A DNA stretch of 64,000 nucleotides from Styela clava (lineage: Eukaryota). A program made the translations under genes and the position numbers. Below are positions 1,203-45,340 of this stretch, one piece after another. Below the pieces are notes generated by a model that searched no databases, was not told where the DNA came from, and saw only the letters and a list, made by a program, of their open reading frames with translations. The stretch spans positions 13,454,001 to 13,518,000 of the forward strand of contig NC_135255.1 in assembly GCF_964204865.1 (NCBI RefSeq). The letters are read 5' to 3'. Positions within the stretch are counted from its first letter, which is position 1. Each line of letters begins with the position of its first letter.

Positions 1203-4034
1203 GATACCGGTTTCATGTCATATTACCATTTTCAATGAGTTGCATTTACTTTTAAAAATCAGTTGAATAAAACAAATCAGCCGGTTCCGCGTTCATTATT
1301 TTGTTTCAGTTAGTATTGTATTATCTACCACTAGAGATTCTTGTATCGATACCCAACACCACTAAAATTTATGAGAATGTGATAGATACTTAGTTTATAC
1401 GCGTAGAACGGCGACGCTACATTTTGTGAACTGGTGAAACTGTCGTCGATTGTGTCGTGCAGTCCTATTCCCTAACTAAAGTGGAGCCCCAGTTTGAAGA
1501 GCCCTGTTCTAGACATTGACAGGGATAAACAAAGAGAAGGATATGGATAAATATCAAAACCTTATATCGACATAAAAACTGTTCTTTGACGGCCTTGTAT
1601 TTCTAAATCTGGACAAAATGTAAGGAAATCCAAGTTTGATAACAAAATGCAGACAAAGTTACGCAAATGTATTTATTAAAAAAAGTAATAATATGCCATC
1701 AAAAGCATTTTTGATTGCAGTGAGTGTCCAAGTGAAAAATGAAATACAGAAACGGGGCAAAGCAGTGACGGAAACATAAATAAAAAGACTGAAAAAATAA
1801 AAACTGCTGAAGATCAAAAAAAATCTTGGATCTTCTAAACTTCCAAATTTGCAGAAAATGAGATATTCTAGACAAGAATATTCTCACGAACTCGACAATA
1901 ATTGAGCATCATTCACAGGAACAAATCGTCTGCACAAAACTTTGGTTTAGGTCGGAAGGAATCATCCAGTTTCTTGACAATATTCTGGTGCAGAATTGAT
2001 CTTCACAAACACTTTCCATCAATTTGTTAAGGTTACACTTAAACTAAGCAAGTAGTCCTACAATACACCAAGTACTGCATAAAACAAAACAATATTAATT
2101 GGCATCTGCAAAGCCCATGAAGGAGCCGAGATGCGAAAATAACAGTTCATGTTTGTTGTAGAACGGGACCTACTGCAGTATTAAACAGTACTTACTGCAA
2201 GTTGAGAAGAACGGGTACTGCAGAATATTTGAATCGAAGATATAGCTGAAAAAAAATAAGTGGCAAAGATGTGTAGAAAAGATTAATGTTATGAGAGTTT
2301 TTTTTTATATTCTGCTCTATCGAAATGGAAGAAAAGTTTGATTAGAACAAATACAGGCAACCACCCTGCTATATTCTAAGGGCGCCCACTTCCAAATACC
2401 CTACTTCTATTTTCTGATGCAAAATATACTGTATATATACAAAAATGTAAAATATTGAGATGCTTAATATAGTAACAAAGATAACCAACCACTCTCACCT
2501 TTTTATTGCAAGAAATTAACTTGAGGAGTTTTGGGCAGAAGACATCCTGCATCCATCTGTAACCATGATGAACATCGAATCTTTTCCGGAATAAAATCTT
2601 CAGGTTTCGCATATGTTTTCAGAGTGGTGAGATACTGCAGTAACAGAGAAAACGTATATTAAAACAAATAAATCGTAACAACATTGTGTAAAATGGAAAG
2701 GAAAATAGAAAGAAGATTAACGAATCAAACAATCCACAATGTCAGTTCTTCTTGCGGTTTCAATACAAGACATGTTGAGTAATTTCCGAAGCAATCAAAA
2801 CACCTCCAACAGACAATGCAAGAGTGATTTCAAATATCTGAAGTTACTATAAACTTTATCTGCCTCTCTTAACACAATACTCTATCCTGTTGTTACTAAA
2901 CTGTTCTGATGAAGAGACTAAATACAAGTCGATATGAATATTTAACCTGAAGTTTTAGACTGGATGTTTCCTAAATATGCATGTTAATATTCGATAATAG
3001 GAAAAAAAAAAATACAGGAGCCCTAAGTCTGCTGAAACTATATTGAAATCAAATGAATATGAGTTTCTTATTACTTTATAATAGGACATTCCTAAAATAG
3101 TGTGAGAAAGAATTTTGAAAGAAAATTTCTTTATTTTTCTTCAGAATGCAAAATAATAGGAATGTCCATAGAATTCAGACACGACGAAGCCCGGGTTTCA
3201 GGGCTATAACATTCAGAAAACGCAATTTACTTCATTAAAATATTGTGAACAAATTGTACAAATTCAAAAAACTTGAAGATTCCAGACTTCAAAGTCAAAA
3301 ATAAAAGAATGACGAAATTCAAGCAAAGGAATAAATTAACAGTTTAAATGATTTGGTTTCTGCAGACGAACTACTTAACTTTTATGCTTTTGTGTCGGTG
3401 AATCCATATGCACTCAATGCAAGGATGCTGTAGTAAGAGTGAAGATAACTATCCTAGTGATTCAAAAGTCTTGATGCACACTAACAACTAAATATATTTC
3501 TATAACGTTTCGTCTGACATTGAACTTGAAACAATGATGACAGGCTTTCAAATCAAACTGAAATGCTAGTCTTTCAACCAGCAAGATTATTAAAACTTCT
3601 GGTGTATCACTAGCAAAACAAAGCAGTTTTACAATCCAACACTCTGACTCTTGATTCATTGAAATAAGAAAGTGCATCTGATTTCAGTATTAGTTTAAGA
3701 GAATGAACATTTAACTGTGGCAAATACAAGACACATTCAAAAATCTCATTCTATTAAAGCTGGAAATTTTCTACCTGCATCTTAAGGACATCTGAAATTA
3801 AAACTCCCATAATGGCTAGTTAATCTGAAAGTATGAAAATATGACCCACAAAAAACTTTAAAATGAATGCAATCAAAATAAATCGATTTTACATACATTT
3901 GCAAGAAGCCACATGGTCTCAATTTTTGTATGAAATTATCACTTTACAAATATAACAACTTTCTAATTGCACTCACCTGTTGCCCAGGAAACAAAGTTAA
4001 AACATTTTACCAGTTAAGAAAAATTTATATTTAC

Positions 4035-7000
4035 ATCAGTCCACAGCTCACGAGAATACGGTACTGCATCCACAGACCGCCGGGACAGATGTATTGCCTA
4101 AAATAGGGATTATTTTCAATAAACATAATTGTCACTTTGTCAATTTCACAAAATCAAAACTTGATACCCGTACCTTTGATATTCTTCCACGAGAGAAAAG
4201 TGACGAGACTGATCTAGATCATTTTGTGAAAAAAAAAAAAAAATTTTTTAAGTTCCCTCATGAAACTTTTATAAATCAATTACAAAAAGGATTTAAACAT
4301 TTAACATCTAAATACTTAGATTTACATACAACTCGTAAGAAAACATGTTGATTACCATAAAACTTGAATAGCAAATATATCAAATATCATTCAAAAAAGA
4401 TTATTCAAGATTTACTACATTTTCCATATCATCATGTTTTGACAAAATGTAGTTGAAGTTATCTTCCATAATATGGAAACGTTTGTTGAGTAATCCCCAA
4501 AACTGAGAAAATGTCGGCAAGCCCTGGAATATAAAAATATATTCCATAAAATTTGGAATATCTGAGTTAATGTTCCCGAAACCTTGATCTAAAATCCAGA
4601 TGAAAGTACAGTCGAAATTGAAAAACCAAACAAGTATTATTTTTCCATTACAAGATAATTTACAAAGACTGTGTATATCAAATACTAATTCTAAATGCCC
4701 ATGGAGTACGCTAAAGCTGAAATGTTTCTACAATTACATTTCCAAATTTGGTATACCCTAATGGTCCCTTGTTTGATTGAAAAAATGGTGTTAAAGAAAC
4801 CCTTTTACTTGAATATAAATTCAAAAAATCACCAAATCAAATACAAATATTTATAAACTTATTTAAATAGTCGTTGCATACTAGTTGGTGCTCCCGAAGT
4901 ATGTGAACCAAAATAGCAGACACCGGTACGTAGTACGTGTACTAGGTTAGGCCATATTTTTATGCCAATTTTCCTTATTTTAGTTCTACTACGAGTTCAG
5001 GGACTAGGCAAGTGACTCCTATACTATGTACCTGAAATTGTGGCCTAGCCCTAACCTGGTACACATACTACGCTCGAGTGTTTGCCATTTTGATTCACAT
5101 ACTACAGGAGTACCTACTAGTTTACCTTCCAACAAATCACCATTTATCCACTTACCTCAATAACAGTGGAACATTATACGGCATCAGATCAGTAAGAAAA
5201 TTATAAGCAGTTGATATGTGTTGCCTTGTATGAAAGCATGATAAGTAGATAGACGCAACCTGTAGTTTATAAAATACTAAACTCAATATCATCATGTAAA
5301 TACTGTCATTATCAAAAATCGTTCGGTCTACGCATTATTACATTTTATATTCAAAATATTCAGTATCCTAAATGAGTTTATTATCATTAAGCAAAAAAGA
5401 AAATTCACAAAAATCTTTATTATTCCGAGAATTAGACATAAACATCTATAAAAAATAAAAGGATATGAATTTTAATAAACAACTGTACACTTACTATTAT
5501 TATGTATCATGTTAGAATCTAGTAACCTAGAGTACATCATCGCCAATAAGTTCACATTATATTTCTACCTGATTATGAAATGTGTAGTCATAAAATCTGG
5601 CATCAGAGCTGAGCAATTCATCAATGGCTAAATCTGGAGAACAAGTTGTTATGCATCGACGAATAACTGCAGTAAAATTCTTTAGCCATATTTGACGCAT
5701 TTTTACAGTTATTGTCGTTGGTTCGACTAGTTTTGAAGCAAGATGCTGACGATATAGAAGATATCTGTAAAGAAAATTTGATATAAAAAATGGACTCGGG
5801 ATATTTTTTTTTCTAAATGAGAGATGCTTTGACCATTTATGTAGTAGTAGTACTTACATATTTATCCTGGAGGAGAGAAAAGAATGGAAATGGAACGCTT
5901 AGCACAATGCCACTGGATATCATCAAGATGTCAAAGGTGACGTGACAATTGAAATTTTAAGAAGTCGCTTAGACAATTTTTAATTCAAGATTTTCAGGCA
6001 TGGCTGGAAACATTATCTAGCAATTGATTAGTTTTTTCGTTGTCTCCAAAACTTGGGTACAAATTAAACAACTGAATGATTATTTTGTCTTCCAAAAAGT
6101 TTTAATTCAGTTACAAGGATCAAAAATGAATCCTGAGAAGAGAAACTAAAATTAGCTATCAATACTTTTGGATTTTACAATGATGGTATCAAGAAGTATC
6201 CAAATAAGTATTTCGAGGAAAATGAATTATTTGAATATTTTTTATTATTAAAAAAATTTGCGAATCTGATTATAAAGTCCCACCTTAGCCATATTTGTCT
6301 TCTATCATTTTCATCACCCACATCCACAATTGCCTTTTCATAATAATCCAGTATAACGTTGACAGATTCGCTGGATAAATCGAGAATTACACTGAAAAGA
6401 ACATGATACACCATAAAGCATTGTTCAAAAATGAATAGAATCCAAATAGGAATTCCATTACAATTTCCGTAATCACAAACATTGATTGAGTGGCACATCA
6501 GAATATTTCTGGATCTACAGGGTGTCCATAAAGTCCCTTTATATTTTCAATTTTGTTACGAAGTCAGGTCTAAATATATCTTAACCAGGTTTGTTGTTTT
6601 TTATTCAGTGAATTCAAAAGTGTTTTTACTTCATCGATCTCGATAAGTATGTTGATAGGTATTTGTTGGTTTGTTTGTCTATCAGACACTTTCGTATGTT
6701 ACGCAATATCTCACGAAAGCGAGGTTGAATCTACTCCAAATTTTGCATGTGCATTCATCATATATCGGACCAGAAGCCTATTGATTTTGGATGAATTATG
6801 TCGTATAATTAGCGAGTTATTAATTAATAAGTGATGGGACATGCAGTGTCGCTATTTAGTCAGAGCGAAGGAATCGAAACCGCAGAGACGGTCTCCGATT
6901 GCTAGCTAGTTTAATACATCTGTAAGGGCCGAAACAATATATGACATCGATAAATACCATTTGCAATATTAAAAAAAATTGAGACACCCAATATATCTTA

Positions 7001-10000
7001 ACACTCATAATTTCAACACCCTTGATCTATTTCACTTACATGTAAATCACCCATAAATATGCTTTGTTCTTCCCAACAATTTTCCAACTAATTTCCGGTA
7101 AAAGAGAAAGATGTTTGTCAGTTAATGAATCCGATAATCTCAATAAGTAGTGAAATAATTTCCTCAATTCTGATAAATTAATCACATCTATATCTGAAAA
7201 AGAAACCAAAATGAAGCTAAAATTGAGAACCTAATATTAATATTAAAATCTACTACAGGGTGGTGGCTAGAAAAACAGTACCAACCTAAAACAACCAAGA
7301 ACCTAAAAGAAAACACACATTTTATTTGTGGTGTCATGTGACCTTCAAATTTTCTGCTTTTTTATCGACCACCCTGGTGTATTTCACATGGTGAATCTTG
7401 ATTTTATAAAAACTACAAAACTTTTACCTATTTTCAAATAAGCTGAAGCACAAGTTTCAAAATACAGAAGTGCAGCATCAATGTCCGATGATTCTTGATT
7501 CAATTGAAACAAAGCTGCTTCATAACAAAGTTTTGCATCAGATGGATTTTCTGTCACAGCTTCTTCAAACACCTTCAAAAAAGTAATACTAAATAGAAGA
7601 AGATCTTCTTGCCTGTTTGTCCTATCCATGACTGTTATAATATCCCATTAAAAATAAGTATGCATCAACGATTTGACTTTTCTCATTTATTACCACAAGA
7701 AAAATAATTTTTTTAAAACTTAACATAATAATTTTGATATTTCAGTGCCTTTTTTATGCTTTTAATGGCTCAGTTATAGTTACATAGTTTATAGCTTTTT
7801 CAAGCTGCAGAATAACATTTCAAACGCCCAAATATCTGTTTTTCAGGCACTTCGTCATTTTCTCACACAATACATTTTGACAACAATACCAAACGCGCAG
7901 AAATTTCACAGTCAAATAGCATGGGAAACAAGTTTTTTGCAATTTCCCATGGCAATTCAAACTACTTCATGACAAAAATAGTACTTTTTTAGCCATTCAA
8001 ATTTAATGAATGGAAACATTCCAACCTCTGAAAGCTAAACGAATGCAACAATTCAATATAAATACTTTGCTTGCTACAGTAGTACAGTAGGCTGCTTAAT
8101 GCAGTAGGTTGGCATGCATAGATGTATTTGCCTCAACTTTATAAATAACAAATAGTAAGATAGAAGTTTCATTGAAATGGAATTGCAACTTGATTAATTT
8201 TAGACAGAAATGTATGCTAGACTGCATTTGAGTTTCAATTCTAATATTTGCTTTAAACAGGCGTTAAATATGAGTAAGGGTATACTATATTGTATGTTTT
8301 TGAGCATTCAATTGCTCGTCAACCAAGTATATTGCAATCAAAGAATTTGCATGCAAATTGAAAATGTCAATACAGAAGAAACGTACCCAATTCCACCACA
8401 ACGAAGTTCACAGGGTGTTCCGGGCAAACGAGGGCCACCTGGTGAAATTGGCCCGAAAGGATCACAGGGGCCCAGAGGACCAATAGGAATTGTTGATTAT
8501 GAAAGAATTGATGCAGCAATAGAATCAGGTAATTTAAATTAATATTGGCCGTAAGCATCAGTGGGGCTTGTACAAAGCCTTGTTTGAAGTGGAAGATCTT
8601 GCAAAAATTACAGATTTTCGTATATAAGAATATATTGAAGTTTACTTCTTATTGTATATATATATATAGTTTACATCTTTTTAAATGATGATATAATGAC
8701 TGTCTGTATGAATGGACTTGGTATAGACAAAACTTAATAATGGGGTTTGTGCAGAACATCCAAGTATGTTATGTTGTGGACTTTATTCACTCATTCATTG
8801 GTAAAATTAAAACCTTTTATCACTAATTTTGATGCTTTTATAAAATTTAGTTTGTTTGATTTGTATTATTACTTCAGCGACCCATACTTTTATATTTAAC
8901 CCATTGCAGCGATAAATGATCTGCGGACAGAAACGGAAGAGAAGATGAATGAAAATATGAATGATCTTCAGCAGAGAATGGGTAATATTTACTAATCTAT
9001 CAATTATGTAAAACTGTTTTGTTAACATTACATGATGGATTTTTTGTCAAAGAGTTTTGTCTCAAACATAAAATTAAATGCAAACTAGAAACAAATGAGA
9101 TTCAGAATCGAGAATTTCCAACATGAATATAAATTATTTTCAAACCGAGATAATTAAATTATTCATTTTCTAAATATAATAGGCAACTGCGAAGTCTTTT
9201 ACAAGAATACTTGTTATCGGATGATACTTCGCGAAACCCAAATGAATTTTGACCGAGCAACACAAGCATGTAGAGATATTGGGATGAATATTGGATACAT
9301 TCAAGATGAAACACATTATCAGAAAATAGCAGAGTTAGTCAGATCAAAATCAACATCATCTGTGACAGGATACTGGACAGGTCTATTGTACAAAAACTCA
9401 GTGAGTATTTAAATTTGATTCATAACGAATATGGTGAACCAGCAAATATTTATCATTTCTATCACATTAAATTATCATTGACTTATCTCGGATTAGGCTC
9501 AGAGCATAGTGCCAAGCATTAGGAATACACTTGCCACAACACCTCTGATTACCCTGCGTGGGTTGGATGGTCCGATCCTGTGTGGGATAACTATGTACAA
9601 GATAATTGCTGGATTCCTCGCTTCCATAGGGTGGTTCACATAACTGCTGGTCAGTTACAGCTTCCTTCACTGTCAAGTTCATGCATCAGAAAACTGGCCA
9701 ACTAACCCCATACCCAACATGTCTGGTACCCGTACAAGAGGCTGCGGTTCCCCATATCAATATTAAGTCGCCTTATCGCCTCACCCTTAATACATATGTA
9801 ACTCCTATCCTATCTATTTCAGCAACTTGTGACACTTTCTGGAAATCCATCACCATTCCCTAAATGGTATCCGAGTAAACCCAATAGTGATGAGCAATAC
9901 AAAAATGTGTACATTTGGGTCCAGAAAGATACAGGAAGTGTATACCACGGCATGGATAACTACATTCCAACAGCCACACAACCTGGAGTGTTATGTCAAA

Positions 10001-12488
10001 TCAAGTATACTTAAGATCATATTAACAAGCATTGTCTACAGATTTCTTATTTGTTAACTTCTCCGATCACACAATACTACAATGCTAGTTATATTGTCAA
10101 TATTCAAATAACGTAAATTGTATCGTGCACCTGATTACAGAATTCCATTTTTTATTATTTTTTCATGATTTGATTATAATCTTGCTTGATATCAATCACA
10201 TATCAAATGAATATGGTCAAAATTAATATTGTTTTTTTTTGGTACTGGCAACAAATATATAAATAATACGAAATTAAAATAGTATGGTCGGAATAAAAGA
10301 AAGAGATGAGAGAAGCATATTTGATTTTTAAAGTACGGTAGTAGTTTTGCGGAAAACATCAAATTTTCATTTCAAGGCAGTCGAAGGATTAATTGACTAA
10401 TTAATTGATTAATTTCAATAATATACCTGTGTGGCAGATAAGCTGTCGCCCTTCTTCACCAAAACATCTGCCCATGTTATAGAAATATCAGTCACTCCCT
10501 TTTTGATCTGGGTTATCGTTTCCTCATTTATTGACAGTTTTTGTATCGCATTAGTCATAGTTTTACACAAAAACCTGTAAAACCAGGAAACTCATTCAAA
10601 CTCATTGAAAACTCATTCAAACTTTTCCTCTCATTTCTAGAATCTTATTATTTTCAGGAACAAATTATTAAAGTTACAGAATTTCTGACATTACATTTTG
10701 ATGAATATGGAATAAAAATTTACATTTAGTTTTGAATTTGCGATAATCTTTAGAATAGAAAGACATAAATCAGAATGATATGTTTTACTTTTTAATGTAT
10801 ATATACTATGTAAATAAAAGCATTCAGTTAATCAGTTGTTTTATTCGTCGATATTGGGCTGATTGGCCATTGTGAAGAAACCAAATACAACGAAGATCAC
10901 ATCATGGGGGATGCAACATAGAATTCAATGATAGAAATGAACGGGTTGTAAAGTACTGGTTAGGATGACAATCAATAGAAGTAAAAAAGAGAATTCCCAA
11001 TTCTTACTTGCAACTATTAGCAGCGTTGTCCCATTTTTGCTGAGATATTTCCAATCGCAATCTTTCCCGAAGTAACTGTAGAGCTGATAATAGATCTTCA
11101 GTTGATGAAGAATCCTTGATAGCAACTGAATCAAACATATAGTAAAATTAAGAATAACTTTGAAAAATTAGAAAATACAAACGACAGAACTGCCCAAATG
11201 AGCGAAGCCATTGAAGAAATCATATATTTCAAATTTATTAAAAAATTAGTTGTGAACGATTATTCACAATATTTCATTACAGCAATGAGATGATGCCTAG
11301 TTTAGGTCGTAATTGTAATTATATCGATTCATACCCTACAGACAGAACAGAAGATATATGGCCTATTTAACTCATGATGACGTCACAAATATAAAAAAAC
11401 TAGTAAAAACAATGTTTATGCTATTCCTAATATTTTCAAATTTTATATGTGTAAATTTTTTCATCTTATCAAACGAAAAAATTCAAAAATAATTTCATGA
11501 TGTATTTGGAATGATAAATTATTTAATTTGGCCACCCCTGACCCGTACCATTATCTGAGTGAACAGGTCATAAAGCGTTGAGAATCACCCCTAATGGGCA
11601 GATTTGATAGTCCATTAGGCTACTCACCGTCAAGGTCAGCATGCAGGTTAGAATAGAAACTTTCGTCACATTTATTCCTTGAATTAAAGTCAAGCTGAAC
11701 TTCTAATCCTGGATAAACTTTGATCCCGAGATAATTTCGAGCATTGCATGCAGAGCTAAAAAGTGACAAATAAATGATATGTTTTTCTGCTCAATATAGA
11801 AATTTGACTCACTCACAAATTCAAATTAATTATGAGAATTACGGATTCAGGTATTTATTTTCAATGAGAAAACAAGGACAAGGGAGTGCTGCTTTGAGAG
11901 CAATAAGATAGAATGTTTCATATTTGATAGGATATTGTGGAGGAAAAAACAATAAAATAGCTTAATAACCACATTACACACCAAAACATATCCTATTATT
12001 CGATTGCTAGTCTACATTAGGTATGGGGAAAAGGTAACCAATTGATTATTTGAAATAGATAATGTGGATGTGGATAAAACTTGGCATTTTTGGACGCTCA
12101 CTCGCAACTTCCGCTGCCTACAACGCCCTGTACAGGTAGCAATTGGGAACTCACTCAAACCCAATCAAAATTTATGAAGCTACTGCTATTCGAACGACCC
12201 CGGATCTTCCCAGTTAGGCATTGCATTTTTATAATACCTTGGGTGAGGTGGGACTTATGGGGCATTAACCCAAGATGTTTAATAATATTAAAGTAAACAT
12301 AAAACTCAATTTTTGTTACATTACCTTATATTTGGAAAAAAGCACTGTGGAAGAGTATTGAAATGCACGACGTTTAAATATGCCAACCAAAGATGATTAA
12401 GATCAGTCAACGTCAAACATCTATTCAAAGAAGATGTAGAAAAGGTGGGAAACTTTTGACATTGTGGAGAGAATTCTTTTACTGTTAC
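4035..12488 (-). CDS. ZFC3H1: ZFC3H1-like (PAXT adaptor) C-terminal HAT/TPR region, copy 1; 12 in-phase exons, about 491 open codons, 5' part missing
   Basis: GT-AG exons 12488-12325, 11755-11628, 11125-11008, 10574-10427, 7572-7428, 7193-7040, 6391-6284, 5764-5569, 5259-5156, 4523-4419, 4213-4174, 4097-4035 join in frame without stops. Motifs match recalled vertebrate ZFC3H1 in order: LWLAYLNVVHFNTLP~LAWLAYIHLIEFNILP; VFEEAVTENP~VWLTAFEKNP; LFHYLL..AYLWVIY~LFRYLL..PYLWLIY; FTAVIRRCITT..DYTFHNQVASIYLSC..LMPYN~FTDLVNRCLVT..NYEFHNRVIFFYLSC..VMPAN; RRSVDAVPYSRELWTD~QRALQKLPLCASLWKD. Confidence 0.75.
4880..5121. mobile_element. Palindromic MITE (copy at 21194-21441)
   Basis: Long imperfect TIRs ACTAGTTGGTGCTCCCGAAGTATGTGAACCAAAAT ... 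ATTTTGATTCACATACTACAGGAGTACCTACTAGT, with internal GGTTAGG/CCTAACC. Lies in an intron of the ZFC3H1-like gene. Confidence 0.7.
6630..6910 (+). mobile_element. Non-autonomous Helitron/Helentron-like repeat (copy about 30580-30860)
   Basis: 5' GTTT/GTCT microsatellite, 3' GAGAC-G-GTCTC palindrome followed by terminal CTAG|T. Confidence 0.45.
8057..8154 (+). promoter_or_regulatory. Putative TATA box and non-coding first exon of collectin gene 1
   Basis: TATAAATA at 8057, donor GTAAGA at 8155, acceptor AAACAG before 8261. The same arrangement precedes all five exon-1 copies (donor GTAAGT at about 42872). Confidence 0.5.
8270..10014 (+). CDS. Mini-collectin 1 (signal peptide, short collagen, neck, C-type lectin domain), intact, 246 aa
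   Basis: Exons 8270-8528, 8910-8981, 9183-9400, 9823-10014 (phases 1,1,0) give 741 nt in frame. Hydrophobic N-terminus; GVPGKRGPPGEIGPKGSQGPRGPIG; heptad neck; C..CY..F..A..AC..YWTGL..W.P.KPN..GVLCQ. Confidence 0.9.
9495..9790 (+). mobile_element. tRNA-derived SINE-like repeat in collectin intron 3
   Basis: Family members elsewhere show B-box-like GTTCGAATC/GGTTTGAATCC and a shared core CCATAGGGTGGTTCAC. Orthologous intronic copies at about 33492, 39676, 44250, 50355, 55413, 59574 and 63878. Independent copies at 42258-42403 (-) and 46215-46435. Confidence 0.6.
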
Positions 12489-12548
12489 CTGTAGAAATGT
12501 TTTCGAATGTTAGAGGAACAAAAGTCGTAAAATAAGGTCAGTCTAGAT

Positions 12549-14319: not shown

Positions 14320-15044
14320 GTCTAGATAAGGGTTATTCAAAATGAACCTTCCGCTCCACTAGGGGACCACAGAGAGTTTCCCTCTGGGCAAAAAGCACTT
14401 TAACTAGGTTTCATTCACGATGACGGTGACAGATCTAGATTAACATTCCAATTTATCAAGTAAAATCTTGTCTGATATTATGCAGAAAATTTGGAAAAAA
14501 AAAAAAAAATATTTCTTTTGAAATATTTTGCTCTCGGTCACAAACTATACATATGGTTAGCTATACTATTTCTCATTGTTGTTATTCTTGTTGACGTTAT
14601 TTGGAAAAAATTGCCAGTACTGCTTGATTTCTCATTTTTAGTACTTAGATAGAAAAAGTTGCAAATTTGCTATTGCTTTTATTTCATTTCTCAAATTTTT
14701 CTATGAGACCAATATAATTACGAAAAACTTTTAGGGCTTTAATTAAAGGGGACACTTTTTTATTCCATCACACTGGTCTTTTTTTGTCATAATTGGTGCT
14801 ATGAGGTCTTAAAATCATCGTACCGTGACCTTTGATGCACAGAGGGTCATATAGAAATGGTTATCTGGCCAGATTGGTTCAACAGTTATTGTTAATATAT
14901 ACCTTCAACATTGGAGCATTAATAAACATCGTTAGTCAAATGAACTTAACTTATTGAGACAATGTAACTATTTATTACGAAATTCGAATAATAAGAAATA
15001 TACTGGAAAATGATTAGTTTGATCAAAAAAATAATTCTTACTTT

Positions 15045-15350
15045 CAACAATGGTAAAACCTTTAAAAATTTGGCGATTATAATAATTAAAGTTGAGTTCG
15101 TTGCAACACTGTTTGCAAAAGCCATCTTGAAGTAACATCTGGTGATAAACCATTTACAGGGATTCCACCTTATAAAGAGAAAGATTATTGATAACAAACA
15201 ACAATAAAATTTACGAAAAGGTCCCAAAGTCAAAAACAAAGTGAAAGAATAACGTAAAAATCACCTTCAACATTATTCAGCAAGTTTGAAATGAGTTGAT
15301 CGTAAAGAAATTCCCTTTTTACAACATTTAAATCCTACGTCGGAAGCTGT
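15045..15350 (-). pseudogene. ZFC3H1: Two degraded upstream ZFC3H1-like exons (copy 1)
   Basis: They translate to ..KREFLYDQLISNLLNNVE|GGIPVNGLSPDVTSRWLLQTVLQRTQL*, similar to recalled SFQLLEALLFRVQL. In-frame stops are present in all four copies (also about 37265-37570, 48610-48920, 57175-57470). Confidence 0.55.
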
Positions 15351-23343: not shown

Positions 23344-23419
23344 CTCCCCCCCAGTCTATGAATGCAATGAAAAAGACGATAATATTGAACATTGTTGATT
23401 CGGAGTAACTGATATGAGA

Positions 23420-29323: not shown

Positions 29324-32269
29324 ATATTGAGTGCCCTACATTGCATTATTTTACGCAAATATGTTACATTTTTTATGTTCCAGTCATTTTAATTTTTTGC
29401 CGTTCCGCAAGTACATTCAATTTAATTTTACCGGTCCGCCAGGTAGAAAGGTTGGGAACCACTGACCTAGAGTACATCATCGCCAATAAGTACACATTAT
29501 ATTTCTACCTGATTATGAAATGTGTAGTCAGAAAATCTGGCATCAGAGCTGAGCAATTCATCAATGGCTAAATCTGGAGAACAAGTTGTTATGCATCGAC
29601 GAATAACTGCAGTAAAATTCTTTAGCCATATTTGACGCGTTTTTACAGTTATTGTTGTTGGTTCGACTAGTTTTGAGGCAAGATGCTGACGATATAGAAG
29701 ATATCTGTAAAGGAAATTTGATATAAAAAATGGAATCGGGATATTTTTTTTTCCAAATGGGAGATGCTTTGACCATTTATGTAGTAGTAGTACTTGCATA
29801 TTTATCCTGGAGGAGAGAAAAGAATGGGAATGGAACGCTTAGCACAATGCGCCACTGGATATCATCAAGATGTCAAAGGTGATGTGACAATTGAAATTTT
29901 AAGAAGTCGCTTAGACAATTTTTAATTCAAGATTCTCAGGCATGGCTGGAAACATTATCTAGCAATTGATTAGTTTTTTCGTTGTCTCCAAAACTTGGGT
30001 ACAAATTAAACAATTGAATGATTATTTTGTCTTACTAAAAGTTTTAATTCAGTTACAAGGATCAAAAATGAGTCCTGAGAAGAGAAACTAAAATTAGCTA
30101 TCAATACTTTTGCATTTTACAATGATGGTATCAAGAAGTATCCAAATAAGTATTTCGAGGAAAATGAATTATTTGAATATACTTTTATTTTTATTATTAA
30201 AAAAATTTGCGAATCTGATTATAAAGTCCCACCTTAGCCATATTTGTCTTCTATCATTTTCATCACCCACATCCACAATTGCCTTTTCATAATAATCCAG
30301 TATAACGTTGACAGATTCGCTGGATAAATCGAGAATTACACTGAAAAGAACATGATACACCATAAAGCATTGTTCAAAAATGAATAGAATCCAAATAAGA
30401 ATTCTATTACGATTTCCGTAATCACAAACATTGATTGAGTGGCACATCAGGATATTTCTGGATCTACAGGGTGTCCATAAAGTCCCTTTATGATTTCAAT
30501 TTTGTTACGAAGTCAGTTCTGAATATATCTTAACCAGGTTTGTTGTTTTTCAATCAGTGAATTCAAAAGTATTTTTACTTCATCGATCTCGATAAGTATG
30601 TTGATAGGTATTTGTTTGTTTGTTTGTCTGTCAGACACTTTCGTATGTTACGCGATATCTCACGAAAGCAAGGTTGAATCTACTCCAAATTTTGCATGTG
30701 CATTCAATATATATTGAATCAGAAGCCTATTGCTTTTGGATGAATTATGTCGTATAATTAGCAAGTTATTAATTAATTAGTGATGGGACATGCGGTGTCG
30801 CTATTTAGTCAGAGCGAAGGAATCGAAACCGCAGAGACGGTCTCCGATTGCTAGCTAGTTTAATACATCTGAGGGCCGAAACAATATATGACATCGATAA
30901 ATACCATTTGCAATATTAAAAAAAATTGAGACACCCAATACATCTTAACACTCATAATTTCAACACCCTTGATCTATTTCACTTACATGTAAATCATCCA
31001 TAAATATGCTTTGTTCTTCCCAACAATTTTCCAACTAATTCCCGGTAAAAGAGAAAGATGTTTGTCAGTTAATGAATCCGATAATCTCAATAAGTAGTGA
31101 AATAATTTCTTCAATTCTGATAAATTAATCACATCTATATCTGAAAAAGAAACCAAAATGAAGCTAAAATTGAGAACCTAATATTAATATTAAAATCATG
31201 TCATCACTTAGGGTGTAATAAACTAGGCAATGCCGAAACCTGGTAACTACAGGGTGGTGGCTAGAAAAACAGTACCAACCTAAAACAACCAAGAACCTAA
31301 AAGAAAACACACATTTTATTTGTGGTGTCATGTGACCTTCAAATTTTCTGCTTTTTTATCGACCACCCTGGTGTATTTCACATGATGAATCTTGATTTTA
31401 TAAAAACTACGAAACTTTTACCTATTTTCAAATAAGCTGAAGCACAAGTTTCAAAATACAAAAGTGCAGCATCAATGTCCGATGATTCTTGATTCAATTG
31501 AAACAAAGCTGCTTCATAACAAAGTTTTGCATCATATGGATTTTCTGTCACAGCTTCTTCAAAGACCTTTAAAAAAGTAATATTAAATAGATAAGATCTT
31601 CTTGCCTGTTTGTCCTATCCATGACTGTTATAATATCCCATTAAAAATAAGTATGCATTAACGATTTGACATTTCTCATTTATTACCACAAGAAAAATAA
31701 TTTTTTTATTTTTTCAAACTTAACATAATAATTTTGATATTTCAGTGCCTTTTTTATGCTTTTAATGGCTCAGTTATAGTTACATAGTTTATAGCTTTTT
31801 CAAGCTGCAAAATAACATTTCAAACGCCCAAATATCTGTTTTTCAGGCACTTCGTAATTTTCTCACACAACACATTTTGACAACAATACCAAACACGCAG
31901 AAATTTCACAGCCAAATAGCATGGGAAACAAGTTTTTCGCAGTTTCCCATGGCAATTCAAAACACTTCACGACAAAAATAGTACTTTTGTAGCCATTCAA
32001 ATTTAATGAATGGAAACATTCCAACCTCTGAAATCTAAACGAATGCAACAATTCAATATAAATACTTTGCTTGCTACAGTAGTACAGTCGGCTGCTTAAT
32101 GCAGTAGGTTGGCATGCATAGATGTATTTGCCTCAACTTTATAAATAACAAATAGTAAGATAGAAGTTTCATTGAAATGGAATTGCAACTTGATTAATTT
32201 TAGACAGAAATGTATGCTAGACTGCATTTGAGTTTCAATTCTAATGTTTGCTTTAAACAGGCGTTAAAT

Positions 32270-34017
32270 ATGAGTAAGGGTATACCATATTGGATGTTTT
32301 TGAGCATTCAATTGCTCGTCAACCAAGTATATTGCAATCAAAGAATTTGCATGCAAATTGAAAATGTCAATGCAGAAGAAACCTACCCAATTCCACCACA
32401 ACGAAGTTCACAGGGTGTTCCGGGCAAACGTGGGCCACCTGGTGAAATTGGCCCAAAAGGATCACAAGGGCCCAGAGGCCCAAAAAGAATTGTCGATTAT
32501 GAAAGAATGAACGCAGCAATAGAATCAGGTAATTTAACTTAATATTTAATTCGTTATTGATTGTAAGCATCAGTGGGGCTTGTATAAAGCCTTGTTTGAG
32601 TGGAAGATCTTGCAGATTTCCCTTTAAAGGAATATATTGAGGTTTACTTCTTATTGTATATATATATAGTTTAAATGATGATATAATGACTGTTCGTATG
32701 AATGGACTTCGTATAGATAAACCTAAGAATGTGGTTTTGGCAGAACATCCAATAATATTCCGTTGCAAATCTATTCACTTATTCATTGGTATTAAATTGA
32801 AATAAGGTATCCCTAACATTGATTCATTTAAAAATTTAGTTTGTTTGATTTATACTATTAGTTCAGCGACCCATACTTTTATATGTAACTTGTTGCAGCG
32901 ATAAATGATCTGCGGACAGAAACGGAAGAGAAGATGAATAAAACTATGAATGATCTTCAGCAGAGGATGGGTAATAGTTACTAAACTATAAGTTATGTAA
33001 AACTGTTTTGTTAACATTACATGATGAATTTTTTGTCAAGGAGTTCTCAAACCTAAAATGCAAACTGGAAACATAAAAATTGTTGGGCAAATAAAATTCA
33101 GAATCCAGAATTCCCAACATGAATTTAATTCATTTTTAAATAGAGCCAATTGAAAATTTCATTTTCTAGATAAAACAGTCAGCTGTGAAGTCATTCACAA
33201 GAATAATTGTTATCGGATGATACTTCGCGAAACCCAAATGAATTTTGACCGAGCAACACAAGCCTGTAGAGATATTGGGATGAATATTGGATACATTGAA
33301 GATGAAACACATTACCAAAAAATAGCAGAGTTAGTCAGATCAAAATCAACATCACCTGGTACGGGATACTGGACAGGACTATTGTACAAAAACTCAGTGA
33401 GTATTTAAATTTGATTCATAACGAATATGGTGAACCAGCAAATATTTATCATTTCTATCACATTAAATTATCATTGACTTATCTCGGATTAGGCTCAGAG
33501 CATAGTGCCAAGCATTAGGAATACGCTTGCCCCAGCACCTCTGATTACCCTGCGTGGGTTGGATGGTCCAATCCTGTGTGGGATAACTATGTACAAGATA
33601 ATTGCTGGACTTCTCGCTTCCATAGGGTGGTTCACATAACCACTGTCCACTGGTCAGTTACAGCTTCCTTCACCGTCAAGTTCATGCATCAGAAAACTGG
33701 CTAACTAATCCCATACCCAACATGACTGGTACCCGTACAAGAGGCTGCGGTTCCCCATATCAATATTAAGTCGCCTTATCGCCTCACCCTTGATACATAT
33801 GTAACTCCTATCCTATCTATTTCAGCAACTTGTGACACTTTCTGGAAATCCATCACCGTTCACTAAATGGTATCCGGGTACACCCAATAGTGGTGAGCAA
33901 TACAAAAATGTGTACATTTATGTCACGAAAGATACAGGAAATGTAAAACAGGGCATGTTTAACTACATTCCAACAGCCACACGACCTGGAGTGTTATGTC
34001 GAATCATGCATACTTAA
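32270..34017 (+). CDS. Mini-collectin 2, intact, 246 aa
   Basis: Exons 32270-32528, 32899-32970, 33179-33396, 33826-34017 are in frame. The last collagen Gly is replaced by Arg (GPKRIV). Confidence 0.88.
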
Positions 34018-37000
34018 GATCATATTAAGAAGCATTGTCTACAGATTTCTTATTTGTTAACTTCTCCGATCACACAATACTACAATGCTAGTTATATTGA
34101 CAATGTCCAAATTACATGAATCAGTTGTTCCCCTGATTACAGAATTCCATTTTTTTTATTTCACGATTTGATTATAATCTTGCTTGATATCAATTACATA
34201 TCAAGTGAATATGGTCAAAATTAATGTTGTGTTTTTTTTTGGTACTGGCAACAAATATATAAATAATACAAAATTAAAATAGTATGGTCGAAATAAAAGA
34301 AAGAGATGAGAGAAGCATATTTGATTTTTAAAGTACGGTAGTAGTTTTGCGGAAAACATCAAATTTTCATTTCAAGGCAGTCGAAGGATTAATTGACTAA
34401 TTAATTGATTAATTCCAATAATATACCTGTGTGGCAGATAAGCTGTCGCCCTTCTTCACCAAAACATCTGCCCATATTATAGAAATATCAGTCACTCCCT
34501 TTTTGATCTGGCTTATCGTTTCCTCATTTATTGACAGTTTTTGTATCGCATTAGTCATAGTTTTACACAAAAACCTGTAAAACCAAGAAACTCATTCAAA
34601 CTCATTGAAAACTCATTCAAACTTTTCCTCTTATTTCTAGAATCTTATTATTTTCAGGAACAAATTATTAAAGTTACAAAATTTCTGACATTACATTTTG
34701 ATGAATATGGAATAAGAATTTACATTTAGTTTTGAATTTGCGATAATCTTTGGAATAGAAAGACATAAATCAGAATGATATGTTTTACTTTTTAATGTAT
34801 ATATACTATGTAAATAAAATCATTTAGTTAATCAGTTGTTTCATTCGTCGATATTGGGCTGATTGGCCATTGTGAAGAAACCAAATACAACGAAGATCAC
34901 ATCATAGGGGAAAATGCAACATAGAATTCAATGATAGAAATGAACAGGTTGTAAAGTACTGGTTAGGATGACAATCAATAGAAGTAAAAAAGAGAATTCC
35001 CAATTCTTACTTGCAACTATTAGCAACGTTGTCCCATTTTTGCTGAGATATTTCCAATCGCAATCTTTCCCGAAGTAACTGTAGAGCTGATAATGGATCT
35101 TCAGTTAATGAAGAATCCTTAATAGCAACTGAATCAAACATATAGTAAATTTAGGAATAACTTTGAAAAATCAGAAAATACAAACGACAGAACTGCCCAA
35201 ATGAGCGAAGCCATTGAAGAAATCATATATTTCAAAATTATTAAAAAATTAGTTGTGAACGATTATTCACAATATTTAATTACAGCAATGAGATGATGCC
35301 TAATTTAGGTCGTAATTGTAATTATATCGATTCATACCCTACAGACAGAACAGAAGATATATGGCCTATTTAACTCATGATGACGTCACAAATATAAAAA
35401 AAAAACTAGTAAAAACAATGTTTATGCTATTCCTAATATTTTCAAATTTTATATGTGTAAATTTTTTTATCTTATCAAACGAAAAAATTCAAAAATAATT
35501 TCATAATGTATTTGGAATGATAAATTATTTAATTTGGCCACCCCTGACCCGTACCATTATCTGAGTGAACAGGTCATAAAATGTAGAGAATCACCCCTAA
35601 TGGGCATATTCGATAGTCCATTAGGCTACTCACCGTCAAGGTCAGCATGCAGGTTAGAATAGAAACTTTCGTCACGTTTATTCCTTGAATTAAAGTCAAG
35701 CTGAACTTCTAATCCTGGATAAACTTTGATCCCGAGATAATTTCGAGCATTGCATGCAGAGCTAAAAGTGACAAATAAATGATATGTTTTTCTGCTCAAT
35801 ATAGAAATTTGACTCACTCACAAATTCAAAGTAATTACGAGAATAACGGATTCAGGTATTTATTATCACTGTGCATGAAAAATTCAGTCAGTTTTTAAAG
35901 TCTAAATTTGACTAGGCCTATTGAAATTTCGCAGGAGTAAATGAGAAAACAAGGACACATAAAAAGGAGTGCTGCTTTGAGAGCAATAGGATAGAATGTT
36001 TCATATTTGGTAGGATATTGTGGAGGAAAAAAACAATAAAACAGCTTAATAACCACATTACACACCCTAACATATCCTATTATTCGATTGCTAGTCTACA
36101 TTATGTATGGGGAAAAGGTAACCAATTGATTATTTGAAATAGATAATGTGGATGTGGATAAAACTTGGCATTTTTGGACGCTCACTCGCAACTTCCGCTG
36201 CCTACAACGCCCTGTACAGGTAGCAATTGGGAACTCACTCAAACCCAATCAAAATTTATGAAGCTACTGCTATTCGAACGGCCCCGGATCTTCCCAGTTA
36301 GGCATTGAATTTTTATAATACCTTGGGTGAGGTGGGACTTCTGGGGCATTAACCCAAGATGTTTAATATTATTAAAGTAAACATAAAACTCAATTTTTGT
36401 TACATTACCCTATATTTGGAAAAAAGCACTGTGGAAGAGTATTGAAATGCACAACGTTTAAATATGCCAACCAGGATGATTAAGATCAGTCGACGTCAAA
36501 CATCTATTCGAAGAAGATGTAGAAAAGGTGAGAAATTTCTGACATTGTTGAGAGAATTCTTTTACTGTTACCTGTAGAAATGTTTTCGAATGTTAGAGGG
36601 GCAAAAGTCGTAAAAAAAGGTCAGTCTAGATAAGGGTTATTCAAAATGAACCCTCCGATCCACTAGGGGACCACAGAGAGTTTCCCTCTGGGCAAAAAGC
36701 ACTTTCACTAGGTTTCATTCACAATGACGATGCCAGATCTAGTTGCTCTCAGTCACGAACTATACATATGGATCGCTATACTATTTCTCATTGTTGTTAT
36801 TCTTGTTGACATTATTTGGAAAAAATGGCCAGTACTGCTAGATTTCTCATTTTTAGTACTTAGATAGAAAAAGTTGCAAATTTGCTATTGCTTTTATTTT
36901 ATTTCTCAAATTTTTCTATGAGACCATTATATTTACGAAAAAATTTTAGGGCTTTAATTAAAGGGGACACTTTTTTATTTCATCACACTGGTCTTTTTTG

Positions 37001-44756: not shown

Positions 44757-45340
44757 GATCGGATTAAAAGCATTATCCACAGAGTTATATTTGTTAACTT
44801 CTCTGATCACACAATACTACAATGCTAGTTATATTGTCAATATTCAAATAACGTAAATCGTATGGTGCACCTGATTACAGAATTCCATTTTTTATGTTTA
44901 TTTTATGATTTGATTAATATCTTGCTTGATATCAATCCTCCATGAGATGACTATGGTCAAAATTAATATTATATAAATAATGAAAAATAAAAAAGTATGG
45001 TATATATAAAAGATAGAAATGGGAGAAGCATATTTGATTATTAAAGCAGTTGTTTTGTGGAAAACAGCAAATTTCCATTTTATGACAGTTGAAGGATTAA
45101 TTAACATTAACAAACAGACAATTTTTCCTAATACCATTAATTCTTTGGAAGGGAATTTGATGAAAAAACAATGTCATGCGCACTCTAAAATAAAGGAAAT
45201 TGATAACCACTGAAGTATAAAGAGCTACTGAGATTATAAGAATTTTGATGTAGAATTCAGTGTTGGTGCATGTGTATTCAAAATATAATGCAATAAACGT
45301 AATAAAGGATCTATAATTAGAAAACATCTCAATACCATAC

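What the first reader, a model, noticed from the sequence alone, without database searches (positions are those of the whole stretch)
7573..10426. The whole collectin gene sits antisense inside one intron of a ZFC3H1-like gene, and host fragments were co-amplified
The minus-strand exon ending ..KKGDSLSATQ (donor 10426, phase 0) joins the exon starting VFEEAVTENP (acceptor 7573, phase 0). This matches the continuous recalled vertebrate sequence ..HDKARAVWLTAFEKNP. The 2.85-kb intron holds the collectin promoter, all its exons and its 3' UTR. The same nesting recurs in unit A2, and the later units keep only the upstream host exons. An immune gene family thus appears to have expanded from within a normally single-copy RNA-surveillance gene, leaving four partial host copies.
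Basis: partly seen in the sequence, partly recalled or inferred. Interest (0 to 1): 0.8.

Follow-up and report, generated by a model that had tools for sequence, protein, structure and literature searches.

The report
Collectin genes nested in amplified ZFC3H1 tail
A small immune-type lectin gene sits backwards inside one intron of the conserved RNA-surveillance gene ZFC3H1, and the lectin plus the gene's 3' exons were copied together at least 16 times; the copied host exons are still spliced into RNA and still evolve like coding sequence, so they may not be dead debris.

Summary

- **The junction is real.** RNA-like contigs from two studies join minus-strand exon 10427-10574 to exon 7428-7572, removing a GT..AG intron at 7573-10426. 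A DNA-like run shows no such joint.
- **The nested gene.** A four-exon, about 246-codon collagen plus C-type-lectin gene lies on the plus strand inside that intron. Its 3' UTR probably runs on through the upstream host exon.
- **The host is a ZFC3H1 orthologue.** A profile of 11 orthologues hits only minus-strand pieces of the window, in exon order. The genome's only zf-C3H1 exon and the rest of the 5' half lie 93 kb beyond the window, on the same strand.
- **The window holds only 5'-truncated copies.** There are two nested units and two shorter fragments.
- **Genome-wide counts.** There are 16-19 copies of the host 3' exons and about 30 collectin copies. All lie in about 345 kb directly downstream of the single-copy 5' half. 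Every copy of the downstream exon has 1-3 collectins beside it.
- **New here.** The copied host exons are conserved islands (pN/pS 0.12 for three exons). RNA carries a duplicate-specific upstream exon.

Neighbouring windows of this scan noted the same nesting. This is a tidy new example of known processes, with an open question about the truncated copies.

The parts
7573..10426 (-). Host intron (2,854 nt, GT..AG, phase 0) that holds the collectin-like gene
   Evidence: Joint 7572^10427 in RNA run X4 and a matching loose end in X5, absent from DNA-like run X10. Splice motifs read.
10427..10574 (-). Host exon E_d, just upstream of the intron (1 nt + 49 codons)
   Evidence: RNA joints 10574^11008 and 7572^10427. 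19 copies in the cluster. No similarity to orthologues on its own. pN/pS about 0.6-1.5 among copies.
7428..7572 (-). Host exon E_e, just downstream of the intron (48 codons + 1 nt)
   Evidence: RNA joints. Matches ZFC3H1 profile positions 1626-1666, E 0.0065. Aligns to VWLTAFEKNP... in an Equus orthologue. 16 copies. pN/pS 0.06.
12325..12488 (-). Host exon E_a
   Evidence: RNA joint 11755^12325 and a loose end beyond 12488. Profile positions 1480-1513, E 4.6e-6. BLASTP to Lingula ZFC3H1-like, E 9e-8.
11628..11755 (-). Host exon E_b
   Evidence: RNA joints 11125^11628 and 11755^12325. Frame is continuous with its neighbours (arithmetic).
11008..11125 (-). Host exon E_c
   Evidence: RNA joints. 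Profile positions 1560-1596, weak (E 0.14) but in exon order. Alignment.
7040..7193 (-). Host exon E_f
   Evidence: RNA joint 7193^7428 in X1, X4 and X5. Profile positions 1667-1721.
6284..6391 (-). Host exon E_g. The start is RNA-supported; the donor is predicted and a shorter alternative cannot be excluded.
   Evidence: The loose end at 7040 matches 6362-6391. Profile positions 1715-1758.
4017..5853 (-). Further downstream host exons, with boundaries only predicted. They lie within pieces 5560-5853, 5156-5259, about 4418-4588 and about 4017-4097.
   Evidence: Profile positions 1772-1813 and 1811-1846, then weak in-order hits at 1843-1879 and 1896-1914.
15042..15168 (-). Exon X of unit A1, the first host exon inside the duplicated unit. 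It carries a +2-nt change shared by all duplicates. An ATG at 15125 is in frame with E_a.
   Evidence: The RNA loose end beyond 12488 matches 48611-48640 exactly, 15042-15071 with 1 mismatch, and the parental copy not at all within 3 mismatches. Alignments. The acceptor is inferred.
8264..8528 (+). Collectin-like exon 1: 5' end about 8264, ATG at 8270, signal peptide, 8 Gly-X-Y triplets
   Evidence: A contig starts at 8264 next to adapter sequence. Joint 8528^8910. Pfam Collagen E 1.4e-4.
8910..8981 (+). Collectin-like exon 2 (charged, probably a coiled-coil neck)
   Evidence: Joint 8528^8910 and loose ends at 8907 and 9184. The neck is an inference from the sequence.
9183..9400 (+). Collectin-like exon 3 (first half of the C-type lectin domain)
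   Evidence: Joint 9400^9823. Pfam Lectin_C E 0.006. PDB C-type lectin domains, E 0.002-0.5. 30 close copies in the cluster.
9823..10730 (+). Collectin-like exon 4: coding to the stop at 10012-10014, then 3' UTR. Poly(A) signals at 10273/10292 and 10667/10711. The long form overlaps host exon E_d antisense.
   Evidence: Continuous high RNA coverage from 9785 to about 10729 and none in 10730-10918. Contigs 10018-10454 and 10410-10549 cross the host splice site. Signals found. Strand not shown, because contigs are unstranded.
31381..34588 (-). Unit A2: the same two host exons (34427-34574 and 31428-31572 by homology) flanking a second collectin copy
   Evidence: Self-BLAST 7252-11863 vs 31246-35868, 93.6%. 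tblastn of parental exons.
45338..47852 (-). Unit 3: upstream host exons only (E_a frameshifted, E_c and E_d present)
56235..56399 (-). Unit 4: E_a copy only

Best explanation
The minus strand of the window carries 5'-truncated tandem copies of the 3' (HAT-repeat) part of this animal's single ZFC3H1 orthologue. ZFC3H1 is the zinc-finger/HAT-repeat protein known from the nuclear RNA-decay adaptor.

**Structure (shown).** One intron of that part, between profile positions about 1625 and 1626 of 1957, contains a complete, independently transcribed gene on the opposite strand. That gene has four exons and about 246 codons, encoding a signal peptide, a short collagen stalk, a neck and a C-type lectin domain. 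The nest existed before amplification, because the proximal copy attached to the unique 5' half of ZFC3H1 has it too.

**Amplification (shown for the layout, inferred for the mechanism).** Unequal crossing-over or segmental duplication then copied a unit of about 11-24 kb many times. The unit runs from the intron upstream of exon X, through the gene's end, to the spacer beyond. The result is about 30 collectins and 16-19 sets of host 3' exons, head to tail over about 345 kb downstream of the 5' half.

**Transcription (partly inferred).** Collectin transcription starts about 690 bp from the downstream host exon and runs towards the upstream one, probably through it. The two genes therefore form a convergent sense/antisense pair.

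**Status of the copied host exons (inferred).** They are transcribed and spliced, and at least the better-conserved ones have been kept under amino-acid-level purifying selection. Some units therefore probably still make a product, most simply an N-terminally truncated HAT-repeat protein starting at an ATG in exon X. Other units are visibly broken.
For: **Splicing.** Both genes are spliced in RNA-like runs from three studies and not in a DNA-like run.

**Host identity.**
- The best zf-C3H1 hit in the 377-Mb genome lies on the same strand at C6:13611219-66 (22 bits, cut-off 20.9).
- A parental HAT exon finds Lingula 'zinc finger C3H1 domain-containing protein-like' at E 2.7e-4 among 1.8 billion proteins.
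- A profile of 11 orthologues hits 15 window pieces with E<1. All are on the minus strand and in exon order; the best plus-strand piece has E 6.2.
- The same profile matches the parental region in exon order from position 281 to 1846, best exon E 3.6e-17.

**Copy numbers and layout.** The 5' exon is single-copy. All 16 E_e copies have 1-3 collectin lectin-domain exons before the next E_d.

**Unit boundary.** Homology with the parental region stops at parental 13608368.

**Conservation of host exons.**
- Divergence among copies is 0.3-3% in host exons against 6-19% in introns.
- For E_e+E_f+E_g, pS is 0.061, pN 0.0072 and the ratio 0.12. Distinct codon variants split 17 synonymous to 8 non-synonymous, p 5e-7.
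- On the same 5-6 units, the ratio for all seven exons ranges from 0.07 to 0.84.

**Duplicate-type exon X in RNA.**
Against: - RNA contigs are unstranded, and copies are 87-99% alike, so no transcript can be assigned to a given copy or strand. Variants at 10415 and 10632 show that the contigs there do not come from copy A1 as assembled.
- Several copies are broken: frameshifts in E_a of A2 and unit 3, indels in E_c of three copies, and stops in two or three E_e copies.
- In all duplicates the ancestral frame of exon X runs into a stop.
- No promoter or 5' end of a duplicate-derived transcript was seen.
- E_b and E_d have no detectable cross-species similarity, and E_d evolves near neutrally.
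- Conservation around E_g extends 55-77 nt into the introns, so not all of it is coding constraint.
- The second half of the lectin domain is not recognisable by sequence.
Confidence: 0.85

Rival explanations
1. The copied host exons are inert by-products. They were dragged along with the collectin, are transcribed only as noise or not at all, and are decaying. The RNA comes from the proximal functional gene.
For: - The duplicates lack the whole 5' half, including the zinc finger.
- Exon X is frameshifted in all duplicates.
- E_a or E_c is disrupted in A2, unit 3, L021 and L022.
- E_d has pN/pS of about 1 or more.
- One old copy is 34% diverged and carries a stop.
Against: - pN/pS is 0.12 with pS about equal to intron divergence, over three exons in 10 copies, p 5e-7.
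- The peptides of E_e, E_f and E_g are nearly identical in copies whose introns differ by 12-13%.
- RNA contigs from two studies carry the duplicate-type exon X spliced to E_a, a sequence that the parental copy does not have within 3 mismatches.
Confidence: 0.3
2. The array is one very long ZFC3H1 transcription unit. The duplicated 3' exon sets are alternative terminal cassettes, chosen by long-range splicing from the single 5' half.
For: - All cassettes share the strand of the 5' half and lie downstream of it.
- The parental exon X ends in phase 0 and every E_a starts in phase 0, so a direct splice would stay in frame.
- Purifying selection on the cassettes.
Against: - The cassettes encode nearly identical peptides, so there is little to gain.
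- It would need transcription through up to 340 kb and 30 convergent, highly expressed collectin genes.
- The RNA seen upstream of E_a is the duplicate-type exon X, which is out of frame with the ancestral reading.
- No joint from a parental exon to a distant cassette could be looked for.
Confidence: 0.08
3. The repeat array is an assembly artefact, from haplotypes or reads mis-stacked into tandem copies.
For: None directly. Arrays of this kind are hard to assemble.
Against: - Units differ by 3-13% and fall into three well-supported clades.
- They carry different transposon insertions, for example the BEL/Pao element present only in A2.
- The DNA-like run X10 covers all 30 bins of the stretch that was laid.
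Confidence: 0.02

Closest known systems
ZFC3H1 / fission-yeast Red1 family (zinc-finger C3H1 plus HAT-repeat proteins of nuclear RNA decay)
   Same: - The parental locus has the zf-C3H1 motif.
- It matches an orthologue profile in exon order over about 1,560 positions.
- Its conserved 5' exon occurs once in the genome.
- The window's exons match the C-terminal HAT part in order.
   Different: - The window's copies lack everything upstream of profile position about 1460.
- 16-19 copies of the 3' part exist, whereas the gene is ordinarily single-copy (this is my own knowledge, and the searches here were not designed to count copies in other species).
- Function in RNA decay was not tested.
Genes nested antisense in an intron of a larger gene (textbook case: OMG, EVI2A and EVI2B in one intron of human NF1; my own knowledge)
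   Same: A complete, independently promoted gene lies on the opposite strand within one intron, and host splicing across it is intact.
   Different: - The nested gene and the flanking host exons were amplified together into a large array.
- Some host-type introns hold 2-3 nested copies.
- The nested gene's 3' UTR probably overlaps a host exon.
Partial (truncated) gene duplicates made by segmental duplication that stay expressed (for example human SRGAP2B/C; my own knowledge)
   Same: Copies of part of a conserved gene lack one end, are transcribed and spliced, and show constraint.
   Different: - Here the 5' end is the missing one.
- The copies are many and in tandem.
- They arose as passengers of an immune-gene expansion.
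- No protein product or effect has been shown.
Collectins (mannose-binding lectin, surfactant proteins A and D) and invertebrate collagen-plus-lectin proteins
   Same: Domain order is signal peptide, Cys-containing N-terminus, Gly-X-Y repeats, short neck exon, C-type lectin domain. One exon encodes the stalk and separate exons encode the neck and the lectin domain.
   Different: - Only 8 Gly-X-Y triplets.
- Per-exon Pfam scores are below the curated cut-offs.
- The second half of the lectin domain is unrecognisable by sequence.
- Read by eye against the canonical motifs (my own knowledge), it has KPN and MDN where EPN/QPD and WND are expected, and it lacks the inner cysteine pair.

Membership tests
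ZFC3H1 / Red1 family (host gene) | zf-C3H1 zinc finger (Pfam PF10650) | tested here: met
   Parental locus C6:13611219-66 (-): 22 bits against a cut-off of 20.9, the only hit above cut-off in the genome. As a whole exon it scores 19.7 bits, E 7e-4, and E 7e-11 against the orthologue profile. It is absent from the window itself, whose copies are 5'-truncated.
ZFC3H1 / Red1 family (host gene) | C-terminal HAT/TPR-like repeat region matching orthologues in order | tested here: met
   Seven window exons hit profile positions 1480-1846 in order, on the minus strand only. The parental region matches 281-1846. The Lingula orthologue P0006 has zf-C3H1 plus HAT repeats.
ZFC3H1 / Red1 family (host gene) | The two exons flanking the intron are themselves recognisable as ZFC3H1 | tested here: inconclusive
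The downstream exon is recognisable (E 0.0065; alignment). The upstream exon has no hit on its own and is tied in only by RNA splicing and its position in the exon order.
ZFC3H1 / Red1 family (host gene) | Single orthologue per genome | tested here: met
   The most conserved 5' exon occurs once in the genome. All copies of the 3' exons lie in one array next to it.
ZFC3H1 / Red1 family (host gene) | Binding to the MTR4 helicase and a role in nuclear RNA decay | not testable with these tools
   Needs biochemistry.
Collectin | Collagen-like Gly-X-Y region | tested here: met
   8 uninterrupted triplets at about 8414-8494. Pfam Collagen E 1.4e-4, 22 bits, below the 27.2-bit cut-off because the region is so short.
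Collectin | C-type lectin domain at the C-terminus | tested here: inconclusive
   Exon 3 matches Lectin_C at E 0.006 (17.8 bits against a cut-off of 22.6), PDB C-type lectin domains at E 0.002-0.5, and more than 100 other lectin-like loci in this genome at 25-40% identity. Exon 4 gives no match. The two halves were not joined for a search.
Collectin | Alpha-helical coiled-coil neck giving trimers | not tested
   Exon 2 (8910-8981) is short and charged. No structure was predicted, because that would need the joined model.
Collectin | Ca-dependent sugar-binding motifs (EPN or QPD, and WND) | tested here: not met
   Reading exon 4 gives KPN and MDN at the expected places, and there is no inner cysteine pair. 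The comparison is with the canonical motifs from my own knowledge.
Nested (intronic, antisense) gene | Whole transcription unit inside one host intron, on the opposite strand | tested here: inconclusive
   The promoter region, 5' end (about 8264) and all coding exons are inside. RNA coverage runs without a break to about 10,729, past the intron's end at 10,426, with a plus-strand AATAAA at 10711. The long 3' UTR form therefore overlaps a host exon. The strand is unproven.

The most novel reading that the evidence does not exclude
The amplification of an immune lectin gene inside ZFC3H1 also created a family of about ten or more conserved, expressed, N-terminally truncated ZFC3H1 paralogues. 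These would be HAT-repeat-only proteins of about 500 residues, starting at an ATG that a 2-nt change put in frame in exon X. Such proteins could compete with or modulate the full-length RNA-decay adaptor. Each one would be locked in a sense/antisense pair with a collectin, so their expression may be coupled to it.
Probability: 0.3. Interest if true: 0.7.

Novelty: new member of a known kind. Interest (0 to 1): 0.45.

Why it matters
- **Origin of an immune gene family.** It shows concretely how such a family can grow from inside a conserved housekeeping gene. One nested gene became about 30, and the duplications had to respect the host's need for one intact 3' end next to its single 5' half.
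- **Annotation.** Gene predictors will probably call many partial 'ZFC3H1-like' genes here and may mis-join them. The true gene is the 5' half at 13.608-13.628 Mb plus the proximal cassette.
- **A natural experiment.** The copied host exons look selected and are transcribed, so the locus is a case of the birth of truncated paralogues of an RNA-surveillance factor. It also bears on convergent transcription between a highly expressed nested gene and its host.
- **If the copies are inert.** Then the finding is an ordinary though neat case of nesting plus tandem duplication.

Tried and rejected
- **Pfam on single host exons.** Scans of the window's exons gave nothing useful. On the parental exons there were only weak HAT hits.
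- **BLASTP against one orthologue.** Comparing every open piece with the Lingula protein was mostly noise; only E_a stood out. A profile of 11 orthologues was needed.
- **E_d and E_b alone.** Neither shows any similarity to the profile.
- **Collectin exon 4 alone.** No Pfam or PDB match.
- **Other species.** This test remains undone.
- **Whole array.** The rest is known only from search coordinates.
- **Unexplained loose end.** X4 contigs carry GCACTCGTTCATC next to 7575. It is not in the array and has only two chance-level hits elsewhere.
- **Wrong boundaries, corrected.** A first dN/dS run used wrong limits for exon E_g and was redone. The E_g/E_h junction could not be settled, because two splice options both fit.
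- **Literature.** No paper links ZFC3H1 to a nested gene. A general search on co-duplication of nested and host genes gave nothing close.
- **Joined model.** All searches were exon by exon.
Full report
**What is at the coordinates**

On the minus strand, an open exon ends ...CACAG followed by GTATAT, so the donor is at 10426/10425. A pyrimidine tract and ...TTGAAG then precede an exon that begins GTGTTTGAAGAA at 7572. Both boundaries fall between codons.

I laid contigs of four public runs on 6950-12600.

- Three runs that behave like RNA (X1, X4, X5; three different studies) show joints with CT..AC ends on the plus strand. These are minus-strand GT..AG introns.
- The joints are 7193^7428, 10574^11008, 11125^11628 and 11755^12325, and in X4 the joint 7572^10427 itself.
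- An X5 contig covers 7040-7193 and 7428-7574, then carries nine more letters that match the beginning of exon 10427+.
- The fourth run (X10) covers every bin and has none of these joints, so it serves as a DNA control.
- No minus-strand splice joint inside 7573-10426 was listed.

The exon lengths and frames fit together without a break from 12488 down to 6391.

**The gene inside the intron**

Plus-strand GT..AG joints (8528^8910, 9400^9823) and loose ends (8907, 9184) give four exons.

| Exon | Coordinates | Content |
|---|---|---|
| 1 | 8264-8528 | ATG at 8270, hydrophobic leader, eight Gly-X-Y triplets |
| 2 | 8910-8981 | short charged exon, probably the neck |
| 3 | 9183-9400 | first half of the lectin domain |
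| 4 | 9823 onward | stop at 10012-10014, then 3' UTR |

This makes about 246 codons.

- **Domain evidence.** Exon 1 matches Pfam Collagen (E 1.4e-4). Exon 3 matches Lectin_C (E 0.006) and C-type lectin domains in the PDB. Exon 4 alone matches nothing. Read by eye, it has KPN and MDN where EPN and WND are expected. 'Collectin-like' is a fair name, but the domain is atypical.
- **5' end.** A contig in X1 begins at 8264 next to adapter sequence, so the 5' end is close to there. The promoter region therefore lies inside the intron, about 690 bp from the host exon at 7572.
- **3' end.** RNA coverage runs without a gap from 9785 to about 10,729 and is zero in the next bin. Contigs 10018-10454 and 10410-10549 cross the host donor site at depths several times those of the spliced host contigs. 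Plus-strand poly(A) signals sit at 10273/10292 and at 10667/10711. The long form of the collectin mRNA therefore probably runs antisense through host exon 10427-10574. This is inferred, since the contigs carry no strand.

**What the host is**

Pfam said nothing about the window's host exons one by one. The genome-wide picture settled it.

- **All copies are in one place.** The two flanking exons and the exon at 12325-12488 occur only on contig C6 between 13.264 and 13.608 Mb, always on the minus strand, in 16, 19 and 16 copies.
- **The zinc finger is next door.** The best zf-C3H1 hit in the 377-Mb genome, and the only one over Pfam's cut-off, lies at 13,611,219-266 on the same strand, just upstream of the last copy.
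- **The 5' half follows.** Reading 13.59-13.64 Mb showed the 5' half of a large gene there, including a 748-codon open exon.
- **Sequence search.** A 61-residue HAT exon from that region was searched against 1.8 billion representative proteins. It found a 2,325-residue Lingula protein named 'zinc finger C3H1 domain-containing protein-like', which has zf-C3H1 and HAT repeats.
- **Profile test.** With that protein I collected 48 orthologues, built a profile from 11 of them, and scored every stop-free piece of the window on both strands (2,174 pieces). The 15 hits with E<1 are all on the minus strand and fall in exon order, in unit A1 and again in unit A2.

| Window piece | Profile positions (of 1,957) |
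|---|---|
| 12324-12509 | 1480-1513 |
| 11007-11147 | 1560-1596 |
| 7387-7647 | 1626-1666 |
| 7039-7230 | 1667-1721 |
| 6178-6546 | 1715-1758 |
| 5560-5853 | 1772-1813 |
| 5155-5334 | 1811-1846 |

- **Parental region.** The same profile matches it in exon order from position 281 to 1846, best exon E 3.6e-17. That exon is unique in the genome.
- **The recalled string.** It exists in the Equus orthologue I fetched (...DQHDKARAVWLTAFEKNP...), and exon 7428-7572 aligns from VWLTAFE onward.
- **The weak point.** The upstream exon 10427-10574 has no detectable similarity of its own. It belongs to the gene because RNA splices it to its neighbours and because it fills the gap in the exon order.

**What the window's copies are**

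Homology between the parental region and the window stops at parental 13,608,368, which corresponds to window 15,358. None of the exons upstream of that point is in the window. All four host copies in the window are therefore 5'-truncated.

- **A1:** exon X at 15042-15168 down to about 4017.
- **A2:** 37.3 kb down to 17.5 kb, interrupted by a BEL/Pao retrotransposon.
- **Unit 3:** three upstream exons.
- **Unit 4:** one exon.

The true gene is the 5' half at 13.608-13.628 Mb plus, presumably, the proximal cassette. That cassette also has a collectin in the same intron, with lectin exon 3 at 13,604,221.

**The array**

Collectin exon 3 has 30 close copies (76-100% identical as protein). All are on the plus strand between 13.267 and 13.604 Mb. 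Other C-type lectin genes in the genome are at most 40% identical.

Ordering the coordinates shows that each of the 16 copies of the downstream exon is followed by collectin exons before the next copy of the upstream exon. In 12 cases there is one collectin, and in 4 cases there are two or three. The remaining collectins sit in units that kept only upstream host exons or none.

A tree of eleven 3.2-kb segments gives three well-supported clades that are interleaved along the chromosome, plus one old, decayed copy. Multi-unit blocks were therefore duplicated again. The parental cassette is only 2.7% from two distal units, which implies continuing exchange.

**Are the copied host exons debris?**

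Evidence that they are not:

- **Conserved islands.** Among ten copies, exons 7428-7572, 7040-7193 and 6284-6391 differ by 0.3-3% per 40-nt window, while the introns around them differ by 6-19%.
- **Selection on amino acids.** With RNA-supported boundaries, pS is 0.061 and pN is 0.0072 (ratio 0.12). Distinct codon variants split 17 synonymous to 8 non-synonymous, where about 79% non-synonymous is expected (p 5e-7). The three peptides are almost identical in all ten copies.
- **Same units, all seven exons.** On the five or six units for which I hold every exon, the ratios are 0.37, 0.36, 0.84 and 0.61 for the four exons upstream of the collectin, and 0.07, 0.18 and 0.43 for the three downstream.
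- **Duplicate-type RNA.** Contigs from two studies continue beyond 12488 into a sequence that matches window 48611-48640 exactly and 15042-15071 with one mismatch. It does not match the parental copy within three mismatches. Duplicate-type exon X is therefore spliced to the next exon in real RNA.
- **A possible start codon.** All duplicates share a 2-nt difference from the parental exon X. It breaks the ancestral frame, which then meets TAA, but it puts an ATG at 15125 (context caagATGG) in frame with the following exon in A1, unit 3 and two other copies.

Evidence that they are:

- A2 and unit 3 have a frameshift in the 12325-12488 exon, and three copies have an indel in 11008-11125.
- The upstream flanking exon evolves neutrally.
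- Conservation around 6284-6391 spills into the introns.
- No 5' end of a duplicate transcript was seen.
- The unstranded contigs cannot be assigned to single copies. Variants at 10415 and 10632 match other paralogues rather than A1.

My reading is that some units are probably still functional at the protein level and others are decaying. I put about 0.3 on a real family of truncated HAT-repeat proteins.

**Collectin evolution**

Sixteen copies of exon 3 give pS 0.139 and pN 0.073. The replacements cluster in two short patches. This indicates relaxed or locally diversifying evolution, as is common in immune gene arrays, but it is not a test of positive selection.

**Comparison with what is known**

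Nested antisense genes in introns and truncated segmental duplicates are both well known, so this case is a new example that combines the two. I found no paper linking ZFC3H1 with a nested gene.

Two first-stage notes on neighbouring windows of the same array describe the same nesting, and one on this window describes the long open frame of copy A1. Those notes are unverified. My genome-wide counts agree with them.

**Limits**

- Only about half of the array was read as sequence.

Noticed in passing
window 22884-29323 (LTRs 22884-23343 and 28864-29323; open frame 23423-28849, minus strand): A BEL/Pao-type LTR retrotransposon lies inside a host intron of unit A2. Its two 460-bp LTRs are 100% identical, and it has one uninterrupted 1,809-codon frame matching Pao peptidase (E 5e-37), reverse transcriptase and DUF5641. 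It is absent from A1 and from the parental cassette, so the insertion is very recent. Observed only.
   Followed up: partly
window 21776-22887 and 29324-29465; parental C6:13599240-13600349: A2 and the parental cassette share an insertion of about 1.1 kb that A1 lacks, between the exons matching profile positions 1772-1813 and 1811-1846. The Pao element then landed inside it in A2. This could serve as a marker for the order of duplications.
   Followed up: no
window 7575 (loose end in run X4): Two RNA contigs that fit exon 7428-7572 continue upstream with GCACTCGTTCATC instead of the expected exon. That sequence is nowhere in the array and occurs only twice elsewhere in the genome. It may be a chimeric contig, a strain-specific exon or an alternative first exon.
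   Followed up: partly
window 12549-12600 and 12556-14320: The DNA-like run X10 jumps to a depth of about 9,000 at 12431-12600, so a very high-copy repeat begins near 12549. The segment 12556-14320 is an insertion in A1 relative to the parental copy. It holds a 221-codon open frame with internal repeats and no Pfam match.
   Followed up: partly
window 6284-6300 and 5680-5700 (minus strand): The motif CAAATATGGCTAA(A/G)G, encoding QIWL, occurs at the end of one host exon and again early in the next open piece. Two different splice pairings would both give a sensible protein, so the real junction needs RNA.
   Followed up: partly
C6:13590827-13593880 (locus L032, minus strand): A 1,018-codon open frame lies just downstream of the parental cassette. 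By eye it looks like the reverse transcriptase of a LINE-type element. It was not scanned against Pfam.
   Followed up: no
C6:13310335-13323883, 13352427-13359827, 13413458-13420011, 13531946-13538775: In four units the host-type intron holds two or three collectin copies. The collectin has therefore also duplicated on its own within the intron, without the host exons.
   Followed up: partly
protein P0006 (Lingula XP_013383591.1), residues about 1405-1566 and 1721-1882: The public Lingula ZFC3H1-like model contains an internal 316-residue repeat, since identical BLAST hits appear 316 residues apart. This is probably an assembly or annotation duplication, so positions in that protein need care.
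   Followed up: no
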